This document shows, in pieces, positions 124 to 53,631 of a stretch of 64,000 nt of DNA. A model generated the notes under the pieces. The model saw only the letters and a list, made by a program, of their open reading frames with translations. It had not been told where the DNA came from and made no database searches. The stretch lies in the sequence record MK250017.1; one strand, written 5' to 3'. Position 1 is the stretch's first letter. The number at the start of each line of letters is the position of its first letter. The position numbers and the translations under genes were made by a program.

Positions 124-1059
124 TTACATTGATCCATCATTTGGCTGCAAACACATAATACCATGTTCTCTCCACATTTTTACTACTTTTGAAGAATCTT
201 CCAAAACAAATAATACATTATAATATGGTTCAATAAATGTTTTATATAGGTTATACTTACAATCTGGACCCTTTGTAAAATTCTTGTATGGTCTCATCAT
301 AACCATATCTACATCACCATCCAAATTATTTTTTAACCATGTTTCAGTTGCTTTTCGTATATCAGGTGTATCTTCTCTACCTGTTAAAATAATAACTTTT
401 ACATTATCATCTTTAATATACTTATTAACTAACTTACAAATTTGTTCACATGGTACATCATTTGTCATTGTATCAGAAGCGCCATTACCATAAAATGGTC
501 TACCTTGTAAATTAAAACAAAGTGTTGCATCCATATCTACAAGAATACAATCTTTCTTATCCTTATCATATGGAACAAAACTGTTATATTGCTTCTTATT
601 AAGCTCTGTTGCTATAAAATTTCTATATTGTCTATATGTTCTCTTAATAACAGATTCTCCAATTGGATTTGTTCTCATTGAATCTCGCCTAATACACTCT
701 TCAACTGAAACATCAAAGAAATCTTTAAATACAAGTTCATATTGATATTTAGTATGTGTATTATTATAATTATCAATTCTATCCTGCATTTCTTTCCAAC
801 CCTTTGGATTAAGGTTCATATTATCCATAATAATATTTAAACCGTTTTCCATTGATGATTTAAAAAATGCATCTGTCATTTCTTTAATAATGTTTAATTT
901 TTCTCTTTCCTCTACCCAATACTGTCCAAACATATTTCTAAGAGAATCCCAATTAATTCTAATTCGTTCTGTTGGTTTTTCCTTTGCCCATTGTTCTGCA
1001 TAAGTTGACTTTCCAGAAGCTTGAATTCCCCTTGTTAATATAATTTCTCTTTTTTCCAT
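124..1059 (-). CDS. pseT: Polynucleotide 5'-kinase/3'-phosphatase (T4 PseT-like)
   Basis: N-terminal P-loop RGIQASGKST, C-terminal HAD DMDATL, LEDS; no in-frame TAG. Confidence 0.85.
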   Translation of the reverse strand: MEKREIILTRGIQASGKSTYAEQWAKEKPTERIRINWDSLRNMFGQYWVEEREKLNIIKEMTDAFFKSSMENGLNIIMDNMNLNPKGWKEMQDRIDNYNNTHTKYQYELVFKDFFDVSVEECIRRDSMRTNPIGESVIKRTYRQYRNFIATELNKKQYNSFVPYDKDKKDCILVDMDATLCFNLQGRPFYGNGASDTMTNDVPCEQICKLVNKYIKDDNVKVIILTGREDTPDIRKATETWLKNNLDGDVDMVMMRPYKNFTKGPDCKYNLYKTFIEPYYNVLFVLEDSSKVVKMWREHGIMCLQPNDGSM

Positions 1060-1086
1060 TATTCTTTTCTAATTTTATTTACAATA

Positions 1087-1094
1087 CAAAGATA
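1087..1094 (-). promoter_or_regulatory. Bacteroidetes-type -7 promoter element (TATCTTTG)
   Basis: Matches TAnnTTTG within the conserved ATGTATCTTTGTATT motif; 28 nt upstream of the pseT-like ATG. Confidence 0.75.
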
Positions 1095-1144
1095 CATATA
1101 TTTTTCCTAAATAAAAAATATAAATCTAATTATTTTCCTAAAAA

Positions 1145-1357
1145 TTATTCATTATCCATAGACATTCCTATAGTTGCATTTCTCATACAATCTAAATAAC
1201 CTTTCATATATAATGATTTCATATGTTCATGTAACTTCTTTAATTTATCCGGTATGTCTGTTTTTATATCTTCTGAAATTTTATCATCACCAAATAAAGA
1301 TATAAGTGAAACTCTTGATTTATGATCAGCAATATTTTTTAATTTTTCTATATTCAT
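1145..1357 (-). CDS. Hypothetical protein
   Basis: ORF in co-oriented gene run. Confidence 0.6.
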   Translation of the reverse strand: MNIEKLKNIADHKSRVSLISLFGDDKISEDIKTDIPDKLKKLHEHMKSLYMKGYLDCMRNATIGMSMDNE

Positions 1358-1368
1358 ATTTTAAATTA

Positions 1369-2064
1369 TTATAAGTTAGACAAGACTAAACCTAAACAAT
1401 ATTCGTTATTAATATCACAAATAAATTTACTAAGTTTACCTTTTAATATTTCAGCGTTTATTTCAAATTCTTCTAATATCTCTTTTTCTTTCTTTATAGT
1501 ATTAATATCAGTTTCTTTCAAATAACTATAAGTATCTTTAGTTTTAAAATTAATATTAGATATTGTATCATTTCTGATAGAATTTATAATTAACATTACA
1601 GATAACTCATATGTATCTTCATTTAATGCTGAACCATGATAACCACATATACCTTTATTTTTCAGTTCAAAAAATACAGGTCCATAACAGTATTTTCCTT
1701 CATGTACAATAGTTCCCAATGATTTCAAACCAAATGTCTTACATATATTAAACTTCTTATCAAGATAATCATTAAATAATTTATTAATAAACATCATCTG
1801 ATATGAAATAAATGTATCAGCATTTAATTCTAATTTAAAATGTGTCTTATCTAAAATATCATACATTAAATCTTGTATATTCATATTACCTAATTCTTCT
1901 TTATATAAAGATGATAAACACATATATAATCTATGTAATGTTTCTTTAATATCATAATTAATATGAACATTTTTCAATTTATCTTCATAATAATTTAAAA
2001 TCGATTTATTAATTAATGTTGCTGCATTATCAATAAAATATTTTCTATTTTCATCATATGTCAT
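1369..2064 (-). CDS. Hypothetical protein
   Basis: 231-aa ORF in tight operon. Confidence 0.7.
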   Translation of the reverse strand: MTYDENRKYFIDNAATLINKSILNYYEDKLKNVHINYDIKETLHRLYMCLSSLYKEELGNMNIQDLMYDILDKTHFKLELNADTFISYQMMFINKLFNDYLDKKFNICKTFGLKSLGTIVHEGKYCYGPVFFELKNKGICGYHGSALNEDTYELSVMLIINSIRNDTISNINFKTKDTYSYLKETDINTIKKEKEILEEFEINAEILKGKLSKFICDINNEYCLGLVLSNL

Positions 2065-2078
2065 ATAATTTAAAAAAA

Positions 2079-2276
2079 TTATTTTTCTTTCATTCGTCTT
2101 AAGATATGTTTAGGTTCTGTATAATAAAAATAATCTTTTGTATTATCATCGATAATATTAAGATTGTATAATGCTTGTGAAAACCTTATATCTTTATATG
2201 TAGTGAGATATTTCTTCAGTATATCTAATATTTCCATATTAGCCTTATATCTCTCAAATGTTTCTTTATCTTCCAT
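2079..2276 (-). CDS. Small hypothetical protein (DIRFSQ motif)
   Basis: 65-aa ORF abutting neighbours. Confidence 0.65.
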   Translation of the reverse strand: MEDKETFERYKANMEILDILKKYLTTYKDIRFSQALYNLNIIDDNTKDYFYYTEPKHILRRMKEK

Positions 2277-2675
2277 TTAAAATAACGGATTAATTTTTAT
2301 TTCATCTGTTTTAGAATATTCAGTTACATTTAATCTCAATGTTTCATTTAACCATTCTGCAATTAAATGTCTATGACAAAATTCATCTGGTTTTTCAAAA
2401 CAACATAATGCACAGTCATTTCCACTTGATATAAATTTAATTCTATCTACAAATATAGATGGATCTTTAAATAAAGATAAAACTTCATTTTTATATCGTT
2501 TTCTGAATTCCTGATGATTAGATCTACAGTTATTTAATATATCAGGTGTAGGAGCAATTGCTATTAAATTAGGTCCATGAAAATCTTTTGGTGGATAACA
2601 GCATATTCCTATTGGAACTATATTATTCTCTTTTAATTTCTTTAGATTTCCAAAATAACTCGTATATATCTTCAT
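2277..2675 (-). CDS. DUF488-like protein
   Basis: MKIYTSYF start and LCCFEKPDEFCHRHLIAEWL motif. Confidence 0.65.
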   Translation of the reverse strand: MKIYTSYFGNLKKLKENNIVPIGICCYPPKDFHGPNLIAIAPTPDILNNCRSNHQEFRKRYKNEVLSLFKDPSIFVDRIKFISSGNDCALCCFEKPDEFCHRHLIAEWLNETLRLNVTEYSKTDEIKINPLF

Positions 2676-2678
2676 ATA

Positions 2679-2894
2679 TTATTTAAAAATATCTTCTAAT
2701 TTTTTATATTCATCTTTTGATATATCATATTTAACAACTGAAGATGAATGAGCAGAACTCAAAGTATTACAAGTATCTATATGGTAAGAATTATCATATC
2801 TATCAAGATAAAAACGTACTATACATGAAATATTAATATAACCTGCACTTTTTGTATATATAAATTTTGTCTTATTATTCTTTAACTTTATCAT
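2679..2894 (-). CDS. Small hypothetical protein; possible paralog of 41981..42286
   Basis: MIKLKNNK start, INISCIV motif. Confidence 0.6.
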   Translation of the reverse strand: MIKLKNNKTKFIYTKSAGYINISCIVRFYLDRYDNSYHIDTCNTLSSAHSSSVVKYDISKDEYKKLEDIFK

Positions 2895-2954
2895 AGTATA
2901 AAAACATTATTATATATTTTTTATATAATATTAAATTGATTTTGTTTAATATAA

Positions 2955-3278
2955 ATGGCAGGTTTTGTATATCTTATTTGTAACCCTGATTAGAATTGTT
3001 ATAAAATCGGAGTAACAAGGGATTTAGCATAGAAACGATTAAAATAGTTATAGACAGGAAATTCATCAAAATTACATATAGTTCATTCTGTATATAGTGA
3101 ATATCCATTTAGGTTAGAATCTATGTTACATAAAACATTTGATTCAAAACGTTCTGAAGGTGAATGGTTTAATTTAGAATAGAAGGATGTAATTAATTTT
3201 AAAGATATATGTAATGAAAAAATTAATATTATTAATATTATGAAAGATAATCCATTCTTTAATAAAGATTTAAAATGA
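2955..3278 (+). CDS. GIY-YIG superfamily T5orf172/Mug113-like protein (TAG=Gln)
   Basis: Absent from the ORF track. Read with TAG=Q: MAGFVYLIC..CYKIGVT..RLKQLQTGN..GEWF; 107 aa, 5 TAG, ends TGA. Confidence 0.85.
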
Positions 3279-3280
3279 AT

Positions 3281-3318
3281 AAAGGTGATATAAGTTATTG
3301 GATTCTTATATCACCTTT
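3281..3318. terminator. Bidirectional intrinsic terminator
   Basis: 14-bp inverted repeat aaaggtgatataag/cttatatcaccttt between convergent genes. Confidence 0.75.
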
Positions 3319-3323
3319 ATTTT

Positions 3324-3590
3324 TTACTTGTTTAATTCTTTATTTAATTCAATCATTTCATCTTCAGATAATTCATGTAAATTAATGAAATTATCTATAT
3401 CTAATAATCCATATTTCAGCATATATGCAATTGTCATTCTTACGGCATAATCTGCAACATCATATGTAGATGCAATTTCCATATTAGATAAATCTGGATT
3501 TTGTAATGTTATTGTTGAAATATTATCTGATAAATCATTAATTGCATCCTTTAATGAATTTATCTGGTTATTTGTTAATGTATTACTCAT
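3324..3590 (-). CDS. Hypothetical protein
   Basis: 88-aa ORF. Confidence 0.65.
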   Translation of the reverse strand: MSNTLTNNQINSLKDAINDLSDNISTITLQNPDLSNMEIASTYDVADYAVRMTIAYMLKYGLLDIDNFINLHELSEDEMIELNKELNK

Positions 3591-3620
3591 TTTATTTTTT
3601 ATTATAATTTAAATAAAAAA

Positions 3621-3652
3621 GATGTTATTAAATTGTGAAATTTAATAACATC
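3621..3652 (-). terminator. Intrinsic terminator downstream of the large ncRNA
   Basis: 14-bp stem GATGTTATTAAATT/AATTTAATAACATC followed by a T tract on the minus strand. Confidence 0.75.
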
Positions 3653-3811
3653 AAGAACTTATGAAAAACTGCTTAAAAATATTCTATTCTTTTTAGGGAA
3701 TATGTTTTAGATTTTTGTACAAACATAAGGTTCTGCCCCTTATGATTCATTTTAACGTTTGCTCGTTATAATGAATGTTCATACTGAACTTTGTTATGTC
3801 CATGAGGACAA

Positions 3812-4690
3812 ATGGCTGAGAACTTGACCAACACCGACTCTCTATGCTGTAACGTTGGAGTTACATGTTCACACAACTCTTATTTCTAAGAGGTTGAGAG
3901 CATACCCACAACTTTTGTGAAAAATCGTAAACTCTTACTTGATAGGTTTCATAGAAATTCATTTCATACCAACTTCCTTGGAAGGATTCAATGTGTCCCC
4001 ACATTTAGCACGATACTACTTTTACTATTCTCATGTCTTTCCTTGCGGTACTCGAATCATGTCTACATATTTCAGTAGAATAAGGGTATTTTAACCACCA
4101 AGTGTCGCACACTTTTGCTTTTGTATAATTTATATACTTAAATAATGTAATCCTAATATTATTATTCTTTATATATTATATTTGATTAGACTTGAAAGAC
4201 GAGGTGCGACCAATAGCATTTCTTCCTTTTGAGAAGAACCCACTAAATCGCCTTTCTGAATTTACATTGCACCATACAATCATAATTCTACTCTTATAAC
4301 TTAACTACATATTTCAGTAGTAATCTTACCATTTCTGAACAAGTTACCAGCTTGCATAGATTATTTAGTTTATAATCCATATAAGATTCATTATAACAAT
4401 TAATATCAGCACTGGGAATTGGTATTCCGATCACTGAATATCCATAAACATAAACCTATTGTATTACTACTCACATCAGTTGCATATTTCACTTCCAATG
4501 TATTTAAACTTCATCTCAGAAAGTTTTCCCTTGATTTCCCATTCAAACAGGTTATTTATGTTTGGTTTTCTGTAGAATGCTCATTATTCATAAACATCAA
4601 CCAACATGCCTACTGTTGATTTTTATCACATCACTGCTTTATCCTTAACTCCACCGAAACCATGGATTCATATTTCAAAGAACTCATTTA
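3812..4690 (-). ncRNA. Large structured ncRNA, GOLLD-like
   Basis: ~880 nt non-coding and more GC-rich than its flanks. Ordered motifs TTCTCAAAAGGAAG..GGTCGCAC..GCAAAAGTGTGCGAC..CTACTGAAATATGTAG..CCGCAAGG..TCTCAGCC recall GOLLD; GTCGCAC/GTGCGAC pair. Boundaries approximate. Confidence 0.6.
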
Positions 4691-4964
4691 AAATGAAATA
4701 ATCTTCAAATTAAATTTGTTATTATTTAGATATTTAACTTAATAACATATATCTATAATATATGTGAAGTTAACCTAAGAAAACTTTATTTAATTTAAAT
4801 AGAGAAAGATAATTATCTAAATCTTATCTTTTTTAAGAAATATAATTTAAACTAAATTTTATATACATAATTTATAACTTAAATTCTTCCAATGACTTAA
4901 GATATAAACACTTAATAAACATACTTAAATTTAATCAAATTATATATTCTTTTATAATTTAAAT

Positions 4965-4993
4965 ATTATATAATCTATAATTTAAAAAGTCTA
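4965..4993 (-). promoter_or_regulatory. Sigma-70-type promoter TAGACT-N17-TATAAT
   Basis: -35 at 4988-4993, -10 at 4965-4970, 17-nt spacer; upstream of the GOLLD-like RNA. Confidence 0.6.
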
Positions 4994-5182
4994 TATTTTA
5001 ATCAAAAAATATTTTATTTTTTTAATTACTTTATTAACTATATGTGTCTTTATCTTCTTTTAATTGATAAAATATAATTTAATTAAAAACTTAATAATTT
5101 AGATTATCAATATGTTTCAAATTTAAATATTATATATGATAATAGAATAATTGTCTATATTTTATAGAAAAAATTTTAAAAA

Positions 5183-5359
5183 TTATTTTAAACAATATTC
5201 TAAATCAAAAATAAAACTCCCTAATAATTCAATCTTATGTCTAATAAGTTCTGCTTCAAGATTAAATTTATGTTCTGAACAAAATGATAATTCAGATAAT
5301 AATTTAGTTCTTTCAGTTTTCCACTTATTTATTAAATCATCTTTAGATAACTCTTCCAT
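5183..5359 (-). CDS. Small hypothetical protein
   Basis: 58-aa ORF MEELSKDDLINKW.., below the track cutoff, in the minus-strand run. Confidence 0.5.
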   Translation of the reverse strand: MEELSKDDLINKWKTERTKLLSELSFCSEHKFNLEAELIRHKIELLGSFIFDLEYCLK

Positions 5360-5384
5360 AATACATTTTCTTTAATCTATTTCA

Positions 5385-5660
5385 TTATTTAATAGTAACT
5401 TTAATTTTTGAATCAGTTACTTTGCCATTAACAACAGTATTTATAGTATCAATAGAAATAGAATCAAGGCTCTTAATAAACATATTAGGTATCTTTACAA
5501 TTGTATCTACACTATCTCTTATCTGAATTGAATCTTTAGTAATATTGATAGTATCATGAATAGGTTTATTATTTGTTACATATCTTGGATTAATCCAAAA
5601 ATACTGAATAGCAACACCTACAATAATTCCTATAATAAATGTCCAAAAAATATGTTTCAT
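5385..5660 (-). CDS. Membrane-anchored hypothetical protein
   Basis: N-terminal TM helix, then DT/DS-rich repeats typical of Bacteroidetes proteins. Confidence 0.65.
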   Translation of the reverse strand: MKHIFWTFIIGIIVGVAIQYFWINPRYVTNNKPIHDTINITKDSIQIRDSVDTIVKIPNMFIKSLDSISIDTINTVVNGKVTDSKIKVTIK

Positions 5661-5680
5661 TTTATATTATAAATTAAAAA

Positions 5681-5890
5681 TTAAACTTTATTTATTAAAT
5701 CAACTAAATCATTATATGTTATCTCTTCATATTTTGTTTTATTTCTACTAATAAAAATAGGTTTATTTAATGATATATTAACATCTTTTAATATCTCATT
5801 CTTATCATTCTCTAAAACATACCAATGTGTTTGTTTATCTAATATTTTTCCAGAACTTGTCTGTCCTAATCCCAACCGTACTATTGTCAT
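5681..5890 (-). CDS. Hypothetical protein
   Basis: 69-aa ORF. Confidence 0.6.
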   Translation of the reverse strand: MTIVRLGLGQTSSGKILDKQTHWYVLENDKNEILKDVNISLNKPIFISRNKTKYEEITYNDLVDLINKV

Positions 5891-6425
5891 ATGAATATAA
5901 TATTTTTAATATTTGAAAAAATCTACCTTCAAAAAAGAAAGAAATNNNNNNNNNNNNNNNNNNNNNNNNNNNNNNNNNNNNNNNNNNNNNNNNNNNNNNN
6001 NNNNNNNNNNNNNNNNNNNNNNNNNNNNNNNNNNNNNNNNNNNNNNNNNNNNNNNNNNNNNNNNNNNNNNNNNNNNNNNNNNNNNNNNNNNNNNNNNNNN
6101 NNNNNNNNTGTTTTACCAAAAAGTCTACATTTATCTTAATTATTTTTTAATCGGATTAAAAATAATTTATAACTAATTAATAATCAATAATTTAAATAAA
6201 TTAATTTTCATATAAATTAATATAAAATAAAAATTCAGATCTAAATTACTTAAATTTAAATCTGAATTTTTAACTAATATAAAAAATTAAATATTATATA
6301 TAAATATCTATCTCAANNNNNNNNNNNNNNNNNNNNNNNNNNNNCAAGTTTCAAGAAAAAGTCTATTTTTTTACAAAATATTTTTAATAAACACTAAAAA
6401 TAATTTATAACTAATTGATATATAA

Positions 6426-7136
6426 TTATTTAAGGTATTCCATTACATCATTAAATGCTTTATTATATTCATCTTCTGATGAACTCTCTAATTTTTCATA
6501 ATATATACGTTCCTGTAATATCTCTTTAATATCTGCATATTCTCGTTTAATATTATATACAGGTTCACCATCAGACCAAGTCTTAACAATAACTCGAGTA
6601 ATATCTAAATATCCTTTATATACATTATCTAACCCATGAATTTTAATATATTCATATATTGGCATAAATGTTTCTTTTATCAATGATTCTTCATCATCTT
6701 TTGAAAGATTCATTTCTTTAATTTGATTTAGTTTTTCTGTATATTCTGCTTTATGAAATTTAAGCCTTAAGGTTCGATAACGTATATATGATGTCGGAAC
6801 AATAGGAACTATATTTGTTTCAGGAAAATCTGAACATAAAGGATAAATTTGATCGAATAACCAAATAATGTATTTGTTATTTACATTAAATTGATATAGA
6901 TTATAAGATTGACGTTTATCATTACTTAACTCCCATAGTTCCTCACTATATGGCATTACTGCAATATAAGTTTCATTCCATATAGAATTATCTAATTTAT
7001 CGATATGAATACTTCGTTCATTCGATCTATCTTTATTGATACAATATAATTTTACATCATCAGGAACAAGAATTTTATCTACATATGAATCATATGCAAA
7101 TCTCCAAATTTTATATTCTTTATAGTTTTTATTCAT
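6426..7136 (-). CDS. Hypothetical protein
   Basis: 236-aa ORF, TAG-free. Confidence 0.7.
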   Translation of the reverse strand: MNKNYKEYKIWRFAYDSYVDKILVPDDVKLYCINKDRSNERSIHIDKLDNSIWNETYIAVMPYSEELWELSNDKRQSYNLYQFNVNNKYIIWLFDQIYPLCSDFPETNIVPIVPTSYIRYRTLRLKFHKAEYTEKLNQIKEMNLSKDDEESLIKETFMPIYEYIKIHGLDNVYKGYLDITRVIVKTWSDGEPVYNIKREYADIKEILQERIYYEKLESSSEDEYNKAFNDVMEYLK

Positions 7137-7156
7137 TTTATAGAAATGTTAAATGA

Positions 7157-7456
7157 TTATCTTCCAATAGCATCATCATCTCCCCATCTGTTTTTAATAA
7201 CATACCCATTTTTATCTACAAAACAATTTGCAAATTTAAATAATTGTAAATATGTTATATTATTGGTATCACATGGTAATGAACCATATATTACATAATT
7301 ACCAGGTTTCATTTCTTCTACAATATTACCATATGTTTCTGGATATTTTGGATATGATGCAGTTTTCTTAGCAAATGCAATATTCAATTCAAGAATATGA
7401 AGTTTTAATTCAATATTTAAATTATCTATTGAATCTGTTTTAATAATATTATTCAT
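7157..7456 (-). CDS. Hypothetical protein (ATG start at 7456 preferred over TTG at 7525)
   Basis: MNNIIK..; the upstream extension is hydrophobic, AT-rich filler. Confidence 0.6.
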   Translation of the reverse strand: MNNIIKTDSIDNLNIELKLHILELNIAFAKKTASYPKYPETYGNIVEEMKPGNYVIYGSLPCDTNNITYLQLFKFANCFVDKNGYVIKNRWGDDDAIGR

Positions 7457-7611: not shown

Positions 7612-8256
7612 TTACTTTGTAGAACTGTTAAATTCTGCTCTAACTTTCTCAATTGCATCACACATATTCACCTTCTTACCAGTAGTACGATCTACCTTTG
7701 TACAATCGTCATTATTAGTGCCATAAATATATACATATGTATCATATGCCTCAGGAAATTCATCTTTTAACTTATTCAATGTTGTAATGTTATTCAATAC
7801 ACAAAGAACTTCTTTGGACCATTTATTGATTTTATATGCATCCAATATAATTTCACGACATTCTGCATACAACTTAGGATAATGAATCTCTAAATATGTT
7901 GCAAGTGGATGATTATCTGATGAATAACCATTATGAACATTGAAATTATTATAAAAGTTATTCAGAAGTTTTGACAATTTAAATGCAGGTGCAGAATAAT
8001 ATCTGAAATTACTATCCAATTCGTTACTTCTAAAAAAGTTATAACCATACATGTTATATTCTCTTGCATTCACATATTGAGGATACTTATCATAAAGATC
8101 TTTTACTTCTGTTGGAACTTCATTCCAAAGTGCATCTTCAATCTCCTTTGAAATCTTTTCAACTCGATCATCAATTTCCTTACGACGTCTCATAGTCTCC
8201 ATTCTACGTGAAATAGTCTGACGCTCATCTTTTGTTAATTTCTTATATGCTACCAT
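7612..8256 (-). CDS. Nmad5-like protein (nucleotide modification associated domain)
   Basis: KLTKDERQTI N-terminus and ITTLNKLKDEFPEA C-terminal motif. Confidence 0.5.
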   Translation of the reverse strand: MVAYKKLTKDERQTISRRMETMRRRKEIDDRVEKISKEIEDALWNEVPTEVKDLYDKYPQYVNAREYNMYGYNFFRSNELDSNFRYYSAPAFKLSKLLNNFYNNFNVHNGYSSDNHPLATYLEIHYPKLYAECREIILDAYKINKWSKEVLCVLNNITTLNKLKDEFPEAYDTYVYIYGTNNDDCTKVDRTTGKKVNMCDAIEKVRAEFNSSTK

Positions 8257-10903: not shown

Positions 10904-11602
10904 TTATTTTCTACGAATTGCTCTAATTGGTAATGATGATAACATATCATATATAGTTATACCAATATTATTTGCATTTAATATTTTATATCCATAATTA
11001 AAATCATATCCGTCATACTCAGTAGAACTCCAGAAACATGCATCTGTTTTATCCTGTACTTTTTTTCCTTTAACAAAACCTGTTGAAGGAATAATTATGA
11101 ATTTATTAGGATTTTTTAATGATGAAACTTTAAATGCAATACCATTTCTTCCTACTCGTATTTGTGATACATCTGTATTATTAATTAATTCTTCAATATC
11201 TTTTTTAGAAGGTATATCCCAACTGGTTCCTAATATAAATTCAGGAACTGAATTATATTTTATTGTTTTATTTTTTAAACGACTATATAATAACTCTACA
11301 TAAGAATCCCAGTTAATACCAGCTGCACTATCTAGTGAAATTTTATCTAATGTAAATCCTTTTCGTCTAAAATAACCTCCTGTTTTTGTTGGTCTAGTTG
11401 CTCCGATATTTCTATCACACCATAAGTTTCCTGATGGTAAATCTAAATCAACAGCTTCATATTCAATTTTATCTTTTCCTATAGTTACACCTGTTACTTT
11501 TTCGGCAAATACCGTATCTATGGAATCTTTATCTGATGCTAAAATATTATCAGTTTCTTCATCAAATAAAGATTCCATAAGTATTTTTATATTTTTATTC
11601 AT
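10904..11602 (-). CDS. DUF1566/Lcl-like domain protein with LMES propeptide
   Basis: VDLDLPSGNLWCDRNIGA, WDIPSKKDIEEL, FWSSTE motifs; AATAAATA at 11626-11633. Confidence 0.6.
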   Translation of the reverse strand: MNKNIKILMESLFDEETDNILASDKDSIDTVFAEKVTGVTIGKDKIEYEAVDLDLPSGNLWCDRNIGATRPTKTGGYFRRKGFTLDKISLDSAAGINWDSYVELLYSRLKNKTIKYNSVPEFILGTSWDIPSKKDIEELINNTDVSQIRVGRNGIAFKVSSLKNPNKFIIIPSTGFVKGKKVQDKTDACFWSSTEYDGYDFNYGYKILNANNIGITIYDMLSSLPIRAIRRK

Positions 11603-42852: not shown

Positions 42853-42953
42853 TAGATGTAGGGAGACTTGAACTCCCAAATTCCATACCTAGAATACCAT
42901 GAAATAAACTCAAAATATTATTGAGTTGCGTTTACCCATTTCGCCATACATCT
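42853..42953 (-). tRNA. Class II (Leu/Tyr-like) tRNA-like gene with aberrant anticodon loop
   Basis: Acceptor AGATGTA/TACATCT + A73; D arm GGCGAAATGGGTAAACGC; T arm GGGAG-TTCAAGT-CTCCC; anticodon arm ACTCA-ATAATATTT-TGAGT; ~30-nt variable region. Confidence 0.75.
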
Positions 42954-43165
42954 ATAAAAAGGTAGTTTCTTATCCGAATGCAGTCTAACTACCAAACCTT
43001 GAGTATCACATTTCGTACGTTTCCCAGATATTGTGACATCTGCTTACTATATTACTATAATAAGTTAATCCTTGAATCACTTAAACCTAATTTAATAGGG
43101 ATACATGTCAATCCATGATTAAAAAGTCTTTAGCTTAACAATATTAAAAAATATCGCAAGGATTG

Positions 43166-43237
43166 CAGCCCTAATAAGATTCGAACTTATAACATCACAA
43201 TTAAATATTATGTGCTCTACCATTGAGCTATAGGGCC
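43166..43237 (-). tRNA. tRNA-Lys(TTT)-like gene with A33
   Basis: GGCCCTA/TAGGGCT, GCTC/GAGC D stem, CATAA-TATTTAA-TTGTG, ATAAG-TTCGAAT-CTTAT. Confidence 0.8.
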
Positions 43238-50230: not shown

Positions 50231-50351
50231 TATTATGCTTTTATTTAGTTTTTATATTTATTATATATAAAAATAGGTAATATGTTTATGAAAAATACAT
50301 ATTACCTATCAAACAAAATTAAACAATTAAATATATATATTATGAAAAATG

Positions 50352-50744
50352 TGGAGACATCCGGAGTCGAACCGGAGTATTACTAACTTGTCAATAATAA
50401 ACTATCTACGTGCGTATTTCTTAATTAGTTTTCATCATACATTCTTAGGAGTTAAACAGTTTAATGTCGTAATCACTCTTATTGGACAAAAAGTATAGTG
50501 AGTTTTATTTAACAGAGAAAACACTCACCGAACTCCGTGGCGATGCTCAACTTACCTTGTAAGGAGCAAATGCTTCAATGGGTTTATATTACCAATCCTA
50601 CCGGATTAAGCTGCCATACGAAAATCAATTTCGTCGTCATTTAAATTTATTTGCTAAATTTCTTTGTATTACTACAAAAGGCTTTTAACTTTCCTACACG
50701 ATTTATTACCACATAATTAATAAGCAAAACCAAAAAATGTCCCC
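50352..50744 (-). ncRNA. ssrA: tmRNA
   Basis: 5' GGGGACA pairs 3' TGTCTCC (G3.U70); T arm CCGG-TTCGACT-CCGG; tag frame DDEIDFRMAA* at 50606-50638. Confidence 0.92.
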
Positions 50745-52614: not shown

Positions 52615-52652
52615 AATTGTAAAAAATTAAAAATATTACTAATGTCATGTCG

Positions 52653-52724
52653 TTGGGGATCCGAGACTCGAACTCGGCCTAAGAGTTTTAGAGACTCCTG
52701 TACTGACCACTATACTAATCCCCA
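52653..52724 (-). tRNA. Amber suppressor tRNA (anticodon CTA), Gln-like
   Basis: TGGGGAT/ATCCCCA (U1-A72, G2-C71, G3-C70); loop CT-CTA-AA; canonical T arm. Confidence 0.92.
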
Positions 52725-53525: not shown

Positions 53526-53557
53526 AATAATTTTTAATATTTAATAACCATATTTTG

Positions 53558-53631
53558 TAGCCCCACTCAGATTCGAACTGAGTCAGCGAAAGTTAGAGTT
53601 TCGAATGCTTAAACCATTACATCATAGGGCA
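53558..53631 (-). tRNA. Second amber suppressor tRNA (anticodon CTA), Gln-like
   Basis: TGCCCTA/TGGGGCT (U1.U72 mismatch); CGAAA-CTCTAAC-TTTCG; CTCAG-TTCGAAT-CTGAG. Confidence 0.92.

What the first reader, a model, noticed from the sequence alone, without database searches (positions are those of the whole stretch)
3812..4690. ~880-nt GOLLD-like ornate RNA in a recoded gut megaphage
Seen: a long, ORF-poor, GC-enriched stretch with a duplicated hairpin CTAC-TGAAATAT-GTAG (4063-4078, 4305-4320), a GTCGCAC/GTGCGAC long-range pair (4204-4210 with 4104-4110), a CCGCAAGG tetraloop, its own promoter and a terminator. Established: GOLLD RNAs are ~800 nt, phage-associated, of unknown function, and form multimeric cages. 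The family call rests on recalled motif order and is not verified.
Basis: partly seen in the sequence, partly recalled or inferred. Interest (0 to 1): 0.65.

Follow-up and report, generated by a model that had tools for sequence, protein, structure and literature searches.

The report
Divergent GOLLD RNA in Lak megaphage
The gene-free, GC-enriched stretch is a roughly 1,000-nucleotide structured RNA gene on the minus strand of Prevotella megaphage Lak-A1; it is a divergent, previously unannotated member of the phage-borne GOLLD family, it is far more conserved than the proteins around it, and it turns up in metatranscriptomes.

Summary
The window is Prevotella phage Lak-A1, which reads TAG as glutamine.

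- **Not coding:** it has no conserved reading frame and no three-base periodicity in its substitutions.
- **Conservation:** it is 89-92% identical across Lak lineages whose neighbouring proteins are only 43-81% identical.
- **Structure:** an 18-sequence alignment gives a consensus fold with z = -10 against column shuffles. It has 56 pairs with compensatory changes, against 3-10 in slid controls. G-U pairs place the RNA on the minus strand.
- **Family:** Rfam scans of 64 kb and 2 kb found nothing. A 1-kb scan with laxer filters hit GOLLD (RF02032) full length, E = 1.2e-16, 65.9 bits (curated cut-off 150). A divergent Lak relative also hits (E = 4.6e-8).
- **Relatives:** a profile of the Lak core finds homologues in unrelated viral contigs, in or beside tRNA islands. 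One has a tRNA inside the linker, a GOLLD hallmark. The family alignment supports the GOLLD helices and pseudoknot by covariation.
- **Expression:** one metatranscriptome holds a 978-nt contig covering 3733-4710 with no flank coverage.

A promoter and a terminator are not shown. Cage formation is inferred.

The parts
3714..4711 (-). Whole conserved RNA gene, about 1,000 nt, read 4711 to 3714.
   Evidence: These are the limits of high conservation across Lak lineages. A metatranscriptome contig covers 3733-4710. The strand follows from G-U pairs: 98.3% of cells are paired on the minus strand and 85.9% when the structure is mirrored onto the plus strand.
4257..4711 (-). 5' domain, the less conserved part, made of many covarying hairpins.
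   Evidence: It is 84-93% identical among Lak lineages and 66% identical in L027. Most helices with compensatory changes lie here. It lies upstream of the Rfam GOLLD model match.
4305..4320 (-). First copy of the CUAC-UGAAAUAU-GUAG hairpin, in the 5' domain.
   Evidence: The exact 16-mer is present. The stem covaries among Lak lineages while the loop is not conserved. The identity with the second copy is therefore specific to some lineages.
3891..4256 (-). Match to the Rfam GOLLD model RF02032 (model positions 1-416).
   Evidence: 65.9 bits, E = 1.2e-16.
4194..4256 (-). Three-part stem with the conserved CAAAA loop, model positions 1-60. The outer helix is 4256-4248 with 4202-4194.
   Evidence: All 9 outer pairs are canonical in 18 Lak sequences. 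In the family alignment 97 of 97 cells are paired and 4 of 9 pairs show double changes. The inner stem has 5 of 9 pairs with double changes.
4122..4193 (-). Variable AU-rich linker between the 5' and 3' regions. It is flanked by the complementary 7-mers at 4204-4210 and 4104-4110.
   Evidence: It is 47-73% identical among Lak lineages and varies in length. It aligns to the unstructured AU-rich part of the GOLLD model. Relative L075 carries a tRNA-Ser at this position. The 7-mers are invariant in Lak and complementary in the relatives, but with shifts of register.
4111..4121 (-). AAAGCAAAAGU motif that opens the 3' region.
   Evidence: It is invariant in all relatives outside Lak and in all Lak lineages but L018, which has one change. 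It is identical to the GOLLD consensus.
4094..4103 (-). 5' strand of the GOLLD pseudoknot.
   Evidence: It pairs with 3937-3946. In the family alignment 4 of 9 pairs show double compensatory changes.
3937..3946 (-). 3' strand of the GOLLD pseudoknot.
   Evidence: Same evidence as for the 5' strand.
4062..4079 (-). Conserved hairpin with loop UGNAAUAU.
   Evidence: The stem is invariant in Lak. It covaries in the family (3 of 5 pairs) and the loop is conserved.
4032..4061 (-). Hairpin capped by CCGCAAGG (4041-4048).
   Evidence: It aligns to the GOLLD CGCAA loop. CGCAAG is invariant in all relatives while the stem sequences vary.
3814..3829 (-). GGUCAAGUUCUCAGCC element, the likely true counterpart of the UCUCA hairpin that ends the GOLLD model.
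   Evidence: It is conserved in L075, L136 and L087. The Rfam alignment placed that hairpin at 3891-3906 and deleted about 90 model positions. The reassignment is my inference.
3714..3813 (-). 3' tail with four hairpins, including the terminal one at 3724-3744 whose loop GGCAGAA is conserved.
   Evidence: It is 92-93% identical among Lak lineages and 63% in L027. The terminal stem has compensatory changes, and 3790-3794 pairs with 3719-3723 with two double changes.
124..2675 (-). Downstream neighbours on the same strand: DUF488-N3a (2277-2675), a 231-aa protein (1369-2064) and polynucleotide kinase-phosphatase (124-1059). This is context, not part of the RNA.
   Evidence: Pfam and PHROGs matches. 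The gene order is kept in L016, L017, L018, L027 and L038.

Best explanation
Window 3714-4711 (minus strand) is a gene for a structured non-coding RNA of about 1,000 nt. It is a divergent member of the GOLLD family, the giant ornate RNAs of phages and prophages.

It has the GOLLD layout:
- a less conserved 5' domain of many hairpins (4711-4257);
- a variable AU-rich linker (4193-4122) closed by conserved complementary strands;
- a nearly invariant 3' domain (4121 to about 3813) that carries the GOLLD core helices, pseudoknot and conserved loops;
- a tail of about 100 nt (3813-3714) that lies beyond the end of the Rfam model.

Shown here: homology to GOLLD, a conserved secondary structure, the strand, the absence of coding signal, and presence as a discrete RNA-sized contig in metatranscriptomes.

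Inferred from published work on GOLLD: the RNA accumulates during lytic growth and assembles with copies of itself into a hollow multimeric cage, with the linker facing inward.

My own speculation: it acts on tRNA or RNA-damage biology. Other GOLLDs sit among tRNA genes. This one sits just upstream of an RNA-repair gene set (DUF488, polynucleotide kinase-phosphatase).
For: **Identity of the genome.** The window is 100% identical to the Lak-A1 records.

**Family.**
- GOLLD RF02032 matches full length at E = 1.2e-16 in the window and at E = 4.6e-8 in relative L027.
- The shared features are the CAAAA-loop stem, the AU-rich linker, AAAGCAAAAGU, the pseudoknot and the CGCAAG hairpin.

**Reciprocal search.**
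- An HMM of the Lak core finds L075 (116 bits, E = 5e-34), L136, L087, L116, L101 and L089 in unrelated viral contigs.
- L075, L136, L087 and L089 lie in or beside tRNA genes. L075 has a tRNA-Ser in the linker.
- These loci hold no homologues of the Lak neighbour proteins.

**Covariation.**
- Eight GOLLD helices tested on that family alignment give 658 of 720 canonical cells. 32 of 58 pairs show double compensatory changes.
- Within Lak there are 318 predicted pairs, 98.3% of cells paired and 56 pairs with double changes. Slid partners give 3-10.
- The consensus energy is -372.5 against -286.6 +/- 8.5 in 12 column shuffles, z = -10.1.

**Conservation.**
- The element is 90.7% identical over 990 nt in L016, where the neighbouring 231-aa protein is 43% identical.
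- The 3' core is 94-98% identical, the 5' domain 84-93% and the linker 47-73%.

**Non-coding.** Variable columns by codon position are 147/132/120. The longest open frame is not conserved between lineages, and indels are mostly not multiples of three.

**Expression.**
- Run X11 (wastewater metatranscriptome) has a 978-nt contig equal to 3733-4710, with no Lak-like flank coverage.
- Run X13 (gut metatranscriptome) has contigs at 3768-4448 and 4419-4716.
Against: - The bit score (65.9) is under Rfam's gathering score (150). The match was lost in the 64-kb and 2-kb scans.
- About 90 model positions near the 3' end were aligned as deleted.
- No tRNA gene was found from about 6 kb upstream to about 13 kb downstream in the Lak-A and Lak-B loci. 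GOLLDs are typically near tRNA islands.
Their assignment rests on the consensus-derived pattern, sequence similarity and context.
- The laid runs are contigs. They cannot show strand, ends or level, and DNA carry-over cannot be excluded formally.
- Within Lak most 3'-domain helices are invariant, so they carry no covariation of their own.
- Multimer formation and function were not tested.
Confidence: 0.85

Rival explanations
1. It is a Lak-specific large structured RNA of independent origin. It resembles GOLLD only by convergence or chance, through shared AU-rich stretches and common loop motifs.
For: The Rfam score is below the curated threshold and the hit depends on filters. Part of the model is aligned as deleted. 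The RNA is not next to tRNA genes. The 5' domain and the 3' tail have no Rfam counterpart.
Against: E = 1.2e-16 over the full model on the correct strand. There is a second hit in L027 that mostly avoids the AU-rich linker. Sequence-level homologues in tRNA islands score 50-116 bits. Compensatory changes across the family fit the GOLLD helices and pseudoknot.
Confidence: 0.07
2. It is a long structured leader or processed 5' UTR that controls the downstream same-strand genes (88-aa protein, DUF488, 231-aa protein, kinase-phosphatase), and has no role of its own.
For: It has the same orientation as the downstream genes and ends about 125 nt from the next start codon. No clear terminator follows it. 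The gene order is kept in several lineages.
Against: Metatranscriptome contigs stop at the element's limits and do not run into the downstream genes. Homologous RNAs in other phages have unrelated neighbours. Extra genes separate the RNA from its upstream neighbour in L036 and L038. Its conservation far exceeds that of the genes it would regulate.
Confidence: 0.04
3. It is a DNA-level element, such as a replication origin, packaging site or recombination hotspot, or a recently transferred mobile segment. That would explain the high identity without any RNA function.
For: Identity is unusually high compared with the flanks. A GIY-YIG homing-endonuclease-like gene lies nearby. AT-rich tracts flank it.
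Against: Substitutions keep base pairs. 735 G-U cells work on one strand only. The conservation is graded by RNA domain. The position is syntenic in all Lak lineages. The CM match is to an RNA family. Contigs in RNA libraries lack the flanks.
Confidence: 0.02
4. It is a protein-coding gene or pseudogene hidden by recoding, frameshifts or introns.
For: The phage reads TAG as glutamine. Lak-B lineages have a 134-codon stop-free frame inside the element.
Against: No frame is conserved between lineages: the longest stop-free run is 80-134 codons. Substitutions show no three-base periodicity. Indels of 1-2 nt are spread along the element. No ORF exceeds 74 aa in Lak-A1 with TAG=Q.
Confidence: 0.01

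Closest known systems
GOLLD RNA (Rfam RF02032; Weinberg et al. 2009; cryo-EM structure in Kretsch et al., bioRxiv 10.1101/2024.12.08.627333)
   Same: - It is phage-encoded and longer than 800 nt.
- It has a less conserved 5' region, a variable linker and a highly conserved 3' region.
- It shares the core helices, the pseudoknot and conserved loops: CAAAA, AAAGCAAAAGU, UGNAAUAU, CGCAAG and UCUCAG.
- It is found in RNA libraries.
   Different: - It scores 65.9 bits against the curated 150, and part of the model aligns poorly.
- It is about 1,000 nt long, with a 3' tail of about 100 nt beyond the model.
- It is not in a tRNA island and has no tRNA in its linker.
- Its host is a 540-kb, TAG-recoded Prevotella megaphage, not one of the Lactobacillales, mycobacterial or aquatic sources usually cited for GOLLD.
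- Its neighbours are RNA-repair genes.
- Multimer formation was not tested.
ROOL RNA (Rfam; phage and prophage RNA of about 580 nt that forms an octameric cage)
   Same: It is a large, ornate, phage-associated RNA of unknown function, abundant and often near tRNA genes.
   Different: No ROOL match appeared at E <= 10 in any scan of the element. [quoted passage not shown]
The 'highly expressed large intergenic regions' of Lak phages (Devoto et al. 2019, PMC6784885; bioRxiv 10.1101/356790)
   Same: The genome is the same. The authors describe regions of up to about 1.5 kb without predicted proteins or tRNAs, some among the most highly expressed parts of A1 and A2. This element fits that description.
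   Different: The paper names no RNA family, structure or coordinates in the text I could read, so I cannot tell whether this region is one of those they plotted. I found no paper in the library that links GOLLD with Lak.

Membership tests
GOLLD RNA (RF02032) | A significant match to the family covariance model. | tested here: met
   Window 3891-4256 (-): E = 1.2e-16, model 1-416 of 416. L027: E = 4.6e-8.
GOLLD RNA (RF02032) | A score at or above Rfam's curated gathering threshold of 150 bits. | tested here: not met
   The score is 65.9 bits. The hit is absent from the 64-kb gathering scan and from the 2-kb E <= 10 scan. The likely causes are divergence and a poorly aligned 3' part.
GOLLD RNA (RF02032) | A highly conserved 3' region, a less conserved 5' region and a variable linker between them. 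| tested here: met
   The 3' core is 94-98% identical, the 5' domain 84-93% and the linker 47-73% among Lak lineages. In L027 the figures are 84%, 66% and 47%. The feature is as stated by Kretsch et al..
GOLLD RNA (RF02032) | Core helices and the long-range pseudoknot kept by covariation. | tested here: met
   The family alignment of Lak sequences and seven viral relatives gives 658 of 720 canonical cells. 32 of 58 pairs show double changes, and the pseudoknot has 4 of 9. The alignment was made by HMM and was not fitted to the structure.
GOLLD RNA (RF02032) | A length of about 800 nt or more, encoded by a phage or prophage. | tested here: met
   About 1,000 nt conserved, in Prevotella phage Lak-A1.
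GOLLD RNA (RF02032) | Location near tRNA islands, sometimes with a tRNA in the linker. This is frequent in the family but not obligatory. | tested here: not met
   No tRNA was found from about 6 kb upstream to 13 kb downstream in the Lak-A and Lak-B loci. The nearest in the window is about 38 kb away. The non-Lak relatives do show the feature.
GOLLD RNA (RF02032) | Accumulation of the RNA during lytic infection. | tested here: inconclusive
   Contigs the size of the element, without flanks, are present in two metatranscriptome studies. Devoto et al. report high expression of intergenic regions. Contigs cannot show strand, level or timing.
GOLLD RNA (RF02032) | Self-assembly into a 14-mer RNA-only cage with D7 symmetry. 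| not testable with these tools
   This is known for GOLLD env-38 only. No tool here predicts RNA quaternary structure.
ROOL, OLE, raiA, HEARO, group I and II introns, RNase P | A match to the Rfam covariance model. | tested here: not met
   None of these appeared at E <= 10 in the scans of 3300-5300 or 3700-4720.

The most novel reading that the evidence does not exclude
The Lak RNA is a distinct, tRNA-free GOLLD subclass and one of the most conserved loci of these megaphages. Its retained long-range pairings build an RNA cage. That cage works together with the adjacent DUF488 and polynucleotide kinase-phosphatase genes in a conflict over tRNA or RNA damage with Prevotella. This would give the first functional context for GOLLD RNAs.
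Probability: 0.15. Interest if true: 0.75.

Novelty: new member of a known kind. Interest (0 to 1): 0.5.

Why it matters
GOLLD RNAs are among the largest bacterial and phage non-coding RNAs. They form RNA-only cages and still have no known function.

- **Wider range.** Finding a divergent member in Lak megaphages extends the family to Prevotella-infecting phages of more than 540 kb, which are among the largest in the human gut and use an alternative genetic code.
- **A name for a known oddity.** It is a candidate identity for one of the 'highly expressed large intergenic regions' reported for Lak phages in 2019.
- **Essentiality.** Its conservation (94-98% in the 3' core, where neighbouring proteins are 43-81% identical) argues for a strongly selected role.
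- **Natural variation.** It has no tRNA in the linker, an added 3' tail and RNA-repair neighbours. This variation can guide hypotheses about function.
- **Method.** Genome-scale Infernal scans with default filters miss this RNA, so GOLLD-like RNAs in AT-rich phage genomes are probably under-counted.
- **Detection.** The invariant 3' core may also serve as a broad marker for Lak phages.

Tried and rejected
- **Rfam at the gathering threshold on 64 kb and at E <= 10 on 2 kb.** Neither gave a GOLLD hit. I first concluded the RNA was outside Rfam, and corrected this after the 1-kb scan.
- **Single-sequence folding.** The z-scores were -1.6 on the minus strand and -0.9 on the plus strand, which is uninformative.
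- **Promoter and terminator scan.** The counts were at chance level.
- **Exact-pattern scans for more distant Lak-like copies.**
  - The viral collection returned the same six Lak contigs.
  - The metagenome scan gave mostly 97-99% identical copies, and its 22-mer has two mismatches to L027-type sequences, so it could not find them.
  - The prokaryote genome scan gave one chance match in a Treponema genome with no further similarity.
- **Synteny walks through neighbouring proteins.**
  - L028, whose kinase is 70% identical, has a tRNA array at roughly the same place instead of the RNA. It has no GOLLD hit even in a short scan.
  - L030 and L034 are cut at the contig end.
  - L031, L035 and L037 are not syntenic.
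- **My own consensus fold.** It paired CUUGGUGG with ACCGCAAG, and CUCGUCUUUC with GAAAGACAUGAG. I rejected both in favour of the GOLLD pseudoknot and outer helix, which the family alignment supports.
- **A sarcin-ricin-like reading of GAGUACCGCAAGGAAAG.** This was recalled from memory, was not tested, and I dropped it.
- **Paralogues.** None were found in the nearest held Lak record. Only AT-rich linker fragments matched.
- **Relatives of the virus record.** They could not be drawn for a whole-genome search.
- **BLAST of relative L136 against GenBank phages.** No match.
- **Run X7 (canine library).** It matched only the AT-rich spacer, so it is no evidence.
- **The run of N in L027.** It lies in the linker. 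I left it unfilled and treated it as gaps.

Full report
**What the window is.** The stretch 3600-4800 is 100% identical to four GenBank records of Prevotella phage Lak-A1. It is 98.7-98.8% identical to Lak-A2 and Lak-C1, and about 90% identical to nine Lak-B genomes over window 3714-4711. The window carries two tRNA genes with anticodon CUA, a tRNA-Lys and a tmRNA. A GIY-YIG/T5orf172 gene at 2955-3278 on the plus strand has five in-frame TAG codons. This agrees with the published use of code 15 by Lak phages.

**The observation.**
- GC content is 30-37% across 3750-4650. It is about 22% downstream and 11-17% upstream.
- No ORF exceeds 74 aa, with or without TAG read as glutamine.
- Promoter-like sites are at chance level (16 found against 19.2 expected). 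The only terminator-like call at the element's end is the hairpin 3724-3744 read on the plus strand.

**Conservation.** Against Lak-B3 the flanking genes are 68-80% identical in DNA, while 3714-4711 is 90% identical. I walked out through neighbouring proteins to fetch more distant Lak-like contigs.
- In L016 the adjacent 231-aa protein is only 43% identical, yet the element is 90.7% identical over 990 nt.
- L017, L018, L036 and L038 are 89-92% identical.
- In L027 the kinase is 69% identical. The element's 3' half is 80% identical and its 5' half 70%.
- L027 has a run of N in the variable middle part. I left it unfilled.
- The element is single-copy in the nearest held Lak record.

**It is a structured RNA on the minus strand and it does not code.**
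- An 18-sequence alignment, folded with RNAalifold, gives 318 pairs with 98.3% of cells paired.
- 56 pairs show changes on both sides. Sliding the partners by 1-3 columns leaves 3-10 such pairs and 36-42% of cells paired.
- Twelve column shuffles that keep conservation classes, refolded, give -286.6 +/- 8.5 kcal/mol against -372.5 observed (z = -10.1). They show 3-19 double-change pairs.
- The same structure mirrored onto the plus strand is only 85.9% paired, because 735 G-U cells become A-C.
- Variable columns show no codon periodicity (147/132/120). The longest stop-free frame differs between lineages (80-134 codons). Indels are mostly not multiples of three.
- More than twenty helices carry compensatory changes, mainly in the 5' half. 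The 3' half is so conserved within Lak that most of its helices never vary.

**Family.** Rfam at the gathering threshold on the whole window found only tRNAs and the tmRNA. A 2-kb scan at E <= 10 listed only noise. I therefore worked for a while on the assumption of a new class.

Rescanning only 3700-4720, where the tool's filters are laxer, gave GOLLD (RF02032). The match is 3891-4256 on the minus strand, 65.9 bits, E = 1.2e-16, model 1-416 of 416, against a gathering score of 150. L027 gave 37.4 bits and E = 4.6e-8 over model 109-298. The alignment shares:
- the three-part stem with the CAAAA loop;
- the AU-rich unstructured linker;
- AAAGCAAAAGU;
- the pseudoknot strands;
- a terminal UCUCA hairpin.

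About 90 model positions near the 3' end were aligned as deleted.

**Reciprocal test.**
- An HMM of the Lak core (no structure used) then found L075 (116 bits, E = 5e-34). It also found L136 (64 bits), L087, L116 and L101 (about 50 bits each), L089 (35 bits) and L073 (22 bits).
- These scores are well beyond what the 17 fixed bases of the pattern can give, except for L073.
- Five of these seven loci carry tRNA genes in or beside the hit. L075 has 12 tRNAs and a tmRNA, with a tRNA-Ser at 10969-11041 exactly where the Lak linker aligns. L073 adjoins 18 tRNAs. L087, L136 and L089 have a tRNA within about 60-350 nt. L116 and L101 have none.
- None of these loci encodes a homologue of the Lak neighbour proteins.
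- On the HMM-made family alignment, eight helices mapped from the Rfam structure give 658 of 720 canonical cells. 32 of 58 pairs show double compensatory changes, including the pseudoknot at 4103-4094 with 3946-3937.
- This overturned two long-range helices of my own consensus fold.
- The alignment also shows that GGUCAAGUUCUCAGCC (3829-3814) and the hairpins before it are conserved in the relatives. The 'deleted' 3' part of the model is therefore probably present but misaligned. That would partly explain the low bit score, and it is my inference.

**Layout.** Identity to Lak-A1 by region:

| Region | Other Lak lineages | L027 |
|---|---|---|
| 5' domain | 84-93% | 66% |
| First GOLLD stem | 95-100% | 90% |
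| Linker | 47-73% | 47% |
| 3' core | 94-98% | 84% |
| 3' tail | 92-93% | 63% |

. This is the published GOLLD pattern of a universally conserved 3' region, a less conserved 5' region and a variable linker.

It is invariant in Lak and complementary in the relatives, but with register shifts. I call it plausible, not proven.

The two identical 16-mer hairpins are not equivalent. The copy at 4062-4079 is a conserved family hairpin with loop UGNAAUAU. The copy at 4305-4320 is a 5'-domain hairpin whose stem covaries and whose loop differs between Lak lineages.

**Expression.**
- Public runs labelled as metatranscriptomes hold the element.
- I laid four runs on 1500-7400 at 80% likeness. Run X11 (wastewater) has one 978-nt contig equal to 3733-4710, with nine differences and no Lak-like coverage of the flanks.
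- Run X13 (gut) has contigs at 3768-4448 and 4419-4716.
- Contigs cannot give strand, exact ends or level, and DNA carry-over is formally possible. However, DNA would be expected to bring the flanks as well.
[quoted passage not shown] They name no RNA family.
- I found no paper in the held library that links GOLLD to Lak or Prevotella phages.

**How it most likely works.**
- *Shown:* a conserved, folded, non-coding, minus-strand RNA that is homologous to GOLLD.
- *Inferred from GOLLD env-38:* copies of the RNA assemble through kissing loops and A-minor contacts into a hollow cage. The 5' domains form caps, the 3' domains form rings, and the linker points inward. One long-range pairing first predicted by covariation is intermolecular in that structure. 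I could not determine whether it is the pseudoknot mapped here.
- *Speculative:* the link to tRNA or RNA-repair biology. It rests only on the neighbours (DUF488-N3a and T4-type polynucleotide kinase-phosphatase) and on the tRNA context of other GOLLDs.

**Differences from typical GOLLD.**
- The Rfam score is below the curated threshold.
- The length is about 1,000 nt, with a 3' tail beyond the model.
- There is no tRNA island.
- The host is a recoded Prevotella megaphage.

**Verdict.** This is a new, divergent member of a known family. It is of moderate interest for three reasons: its extreme conservation, its host, and the fact that standard scans miss it.

Noticed in passing
window 42853-42953 (-): A 101-nt tRNA match (43.3 bits) appeared only in the 1-kb Rfam scan. 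The 64-kb scan and ARAGORN both missed it. Its length suggests an intron-containing tRNA of the kind Devoto et al. describe for Lak phages.
   Followed up: no
window 50349-50744 (-), 52652-52724 (-), 53557-53631 (-), 43165-43237 (-): The phage encodes a tmRNA (54 bits), two tRNAs with anticodon CUA (TAG suppressors) and a tRNA-Lys(UUU). This translation toolkit is consistent with code 15.
   Followed up: partly
window 2955-3278 (+): A 107-aa GIY-YIG/T5orf172/MUG113 homing-endonuclease-like gene has five in-frame TAG codons. It lies on the opposite strand within a block of minus-strand genes that use no TAG. The gene recurs downstream of the RNA in L016, L027, L028, L034 and L038.
   Followed up: partly
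window 124-2675 (-): An RNA-repair-type gene set lies just downstream of the RNA: DUF488-N3a, a Lak-specific 231-aa protein and a T4-like polynucleotide kinase-phosphatase. The protein at 7612-8256 has a weak hit to a ligase N-terminal domain (E = 0.0035).
   Followed up: partly
window 4712-5384 and 5850-6450: These spacers are extremely AT-rich (GC 11-17% and 7-11%) and have no conserved ORF. The first differs between strains by indels: one metatranscriptome contig skips 4717-4965.
   Followed up: no
L028:2950-6500: A Lak-like relative (kinase 70% identical) has ten tRNA genes at roughly the place of the RNA. Between them lie GC-rich untranslated spacers of 200-600 nt (for example 4720-4970 and 5430-6030) that match no Rfam family.
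   Followed up: partly
L075:10540-11450: This is the closest relative of the RNA outside Lak (92-kb viral contig, 40% GC). It has a tRNA-Ser inside its linker and sits among 12 tRNAs and a tmRNA. It also shows weak similarity to the Lak 5' domain (E = 0.002).
   Followed up: partly
L027:2300-2420: A scaffold gap (run of N) lies inside the variable linker, with the same roughly 50-nt sequence on both sides of it. It looks like an assembly overlap. I left it unfilled.
   Followed up: no
window 3700-4720 (method): The same Rfam library found GOLLD at E = 1e-16 on 1 kb but nothing on 2 kb or 64 kb. Filter loss in AT-rich sequence may hide other RNAs in this genome.
   Followed up: partly
L001, L003, L007 (Lak-B copies of the element): Lak-B lineages have a 134-codon stop-free frame within the RNA. 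It is not conserved in other lineages.
   Followed up: no
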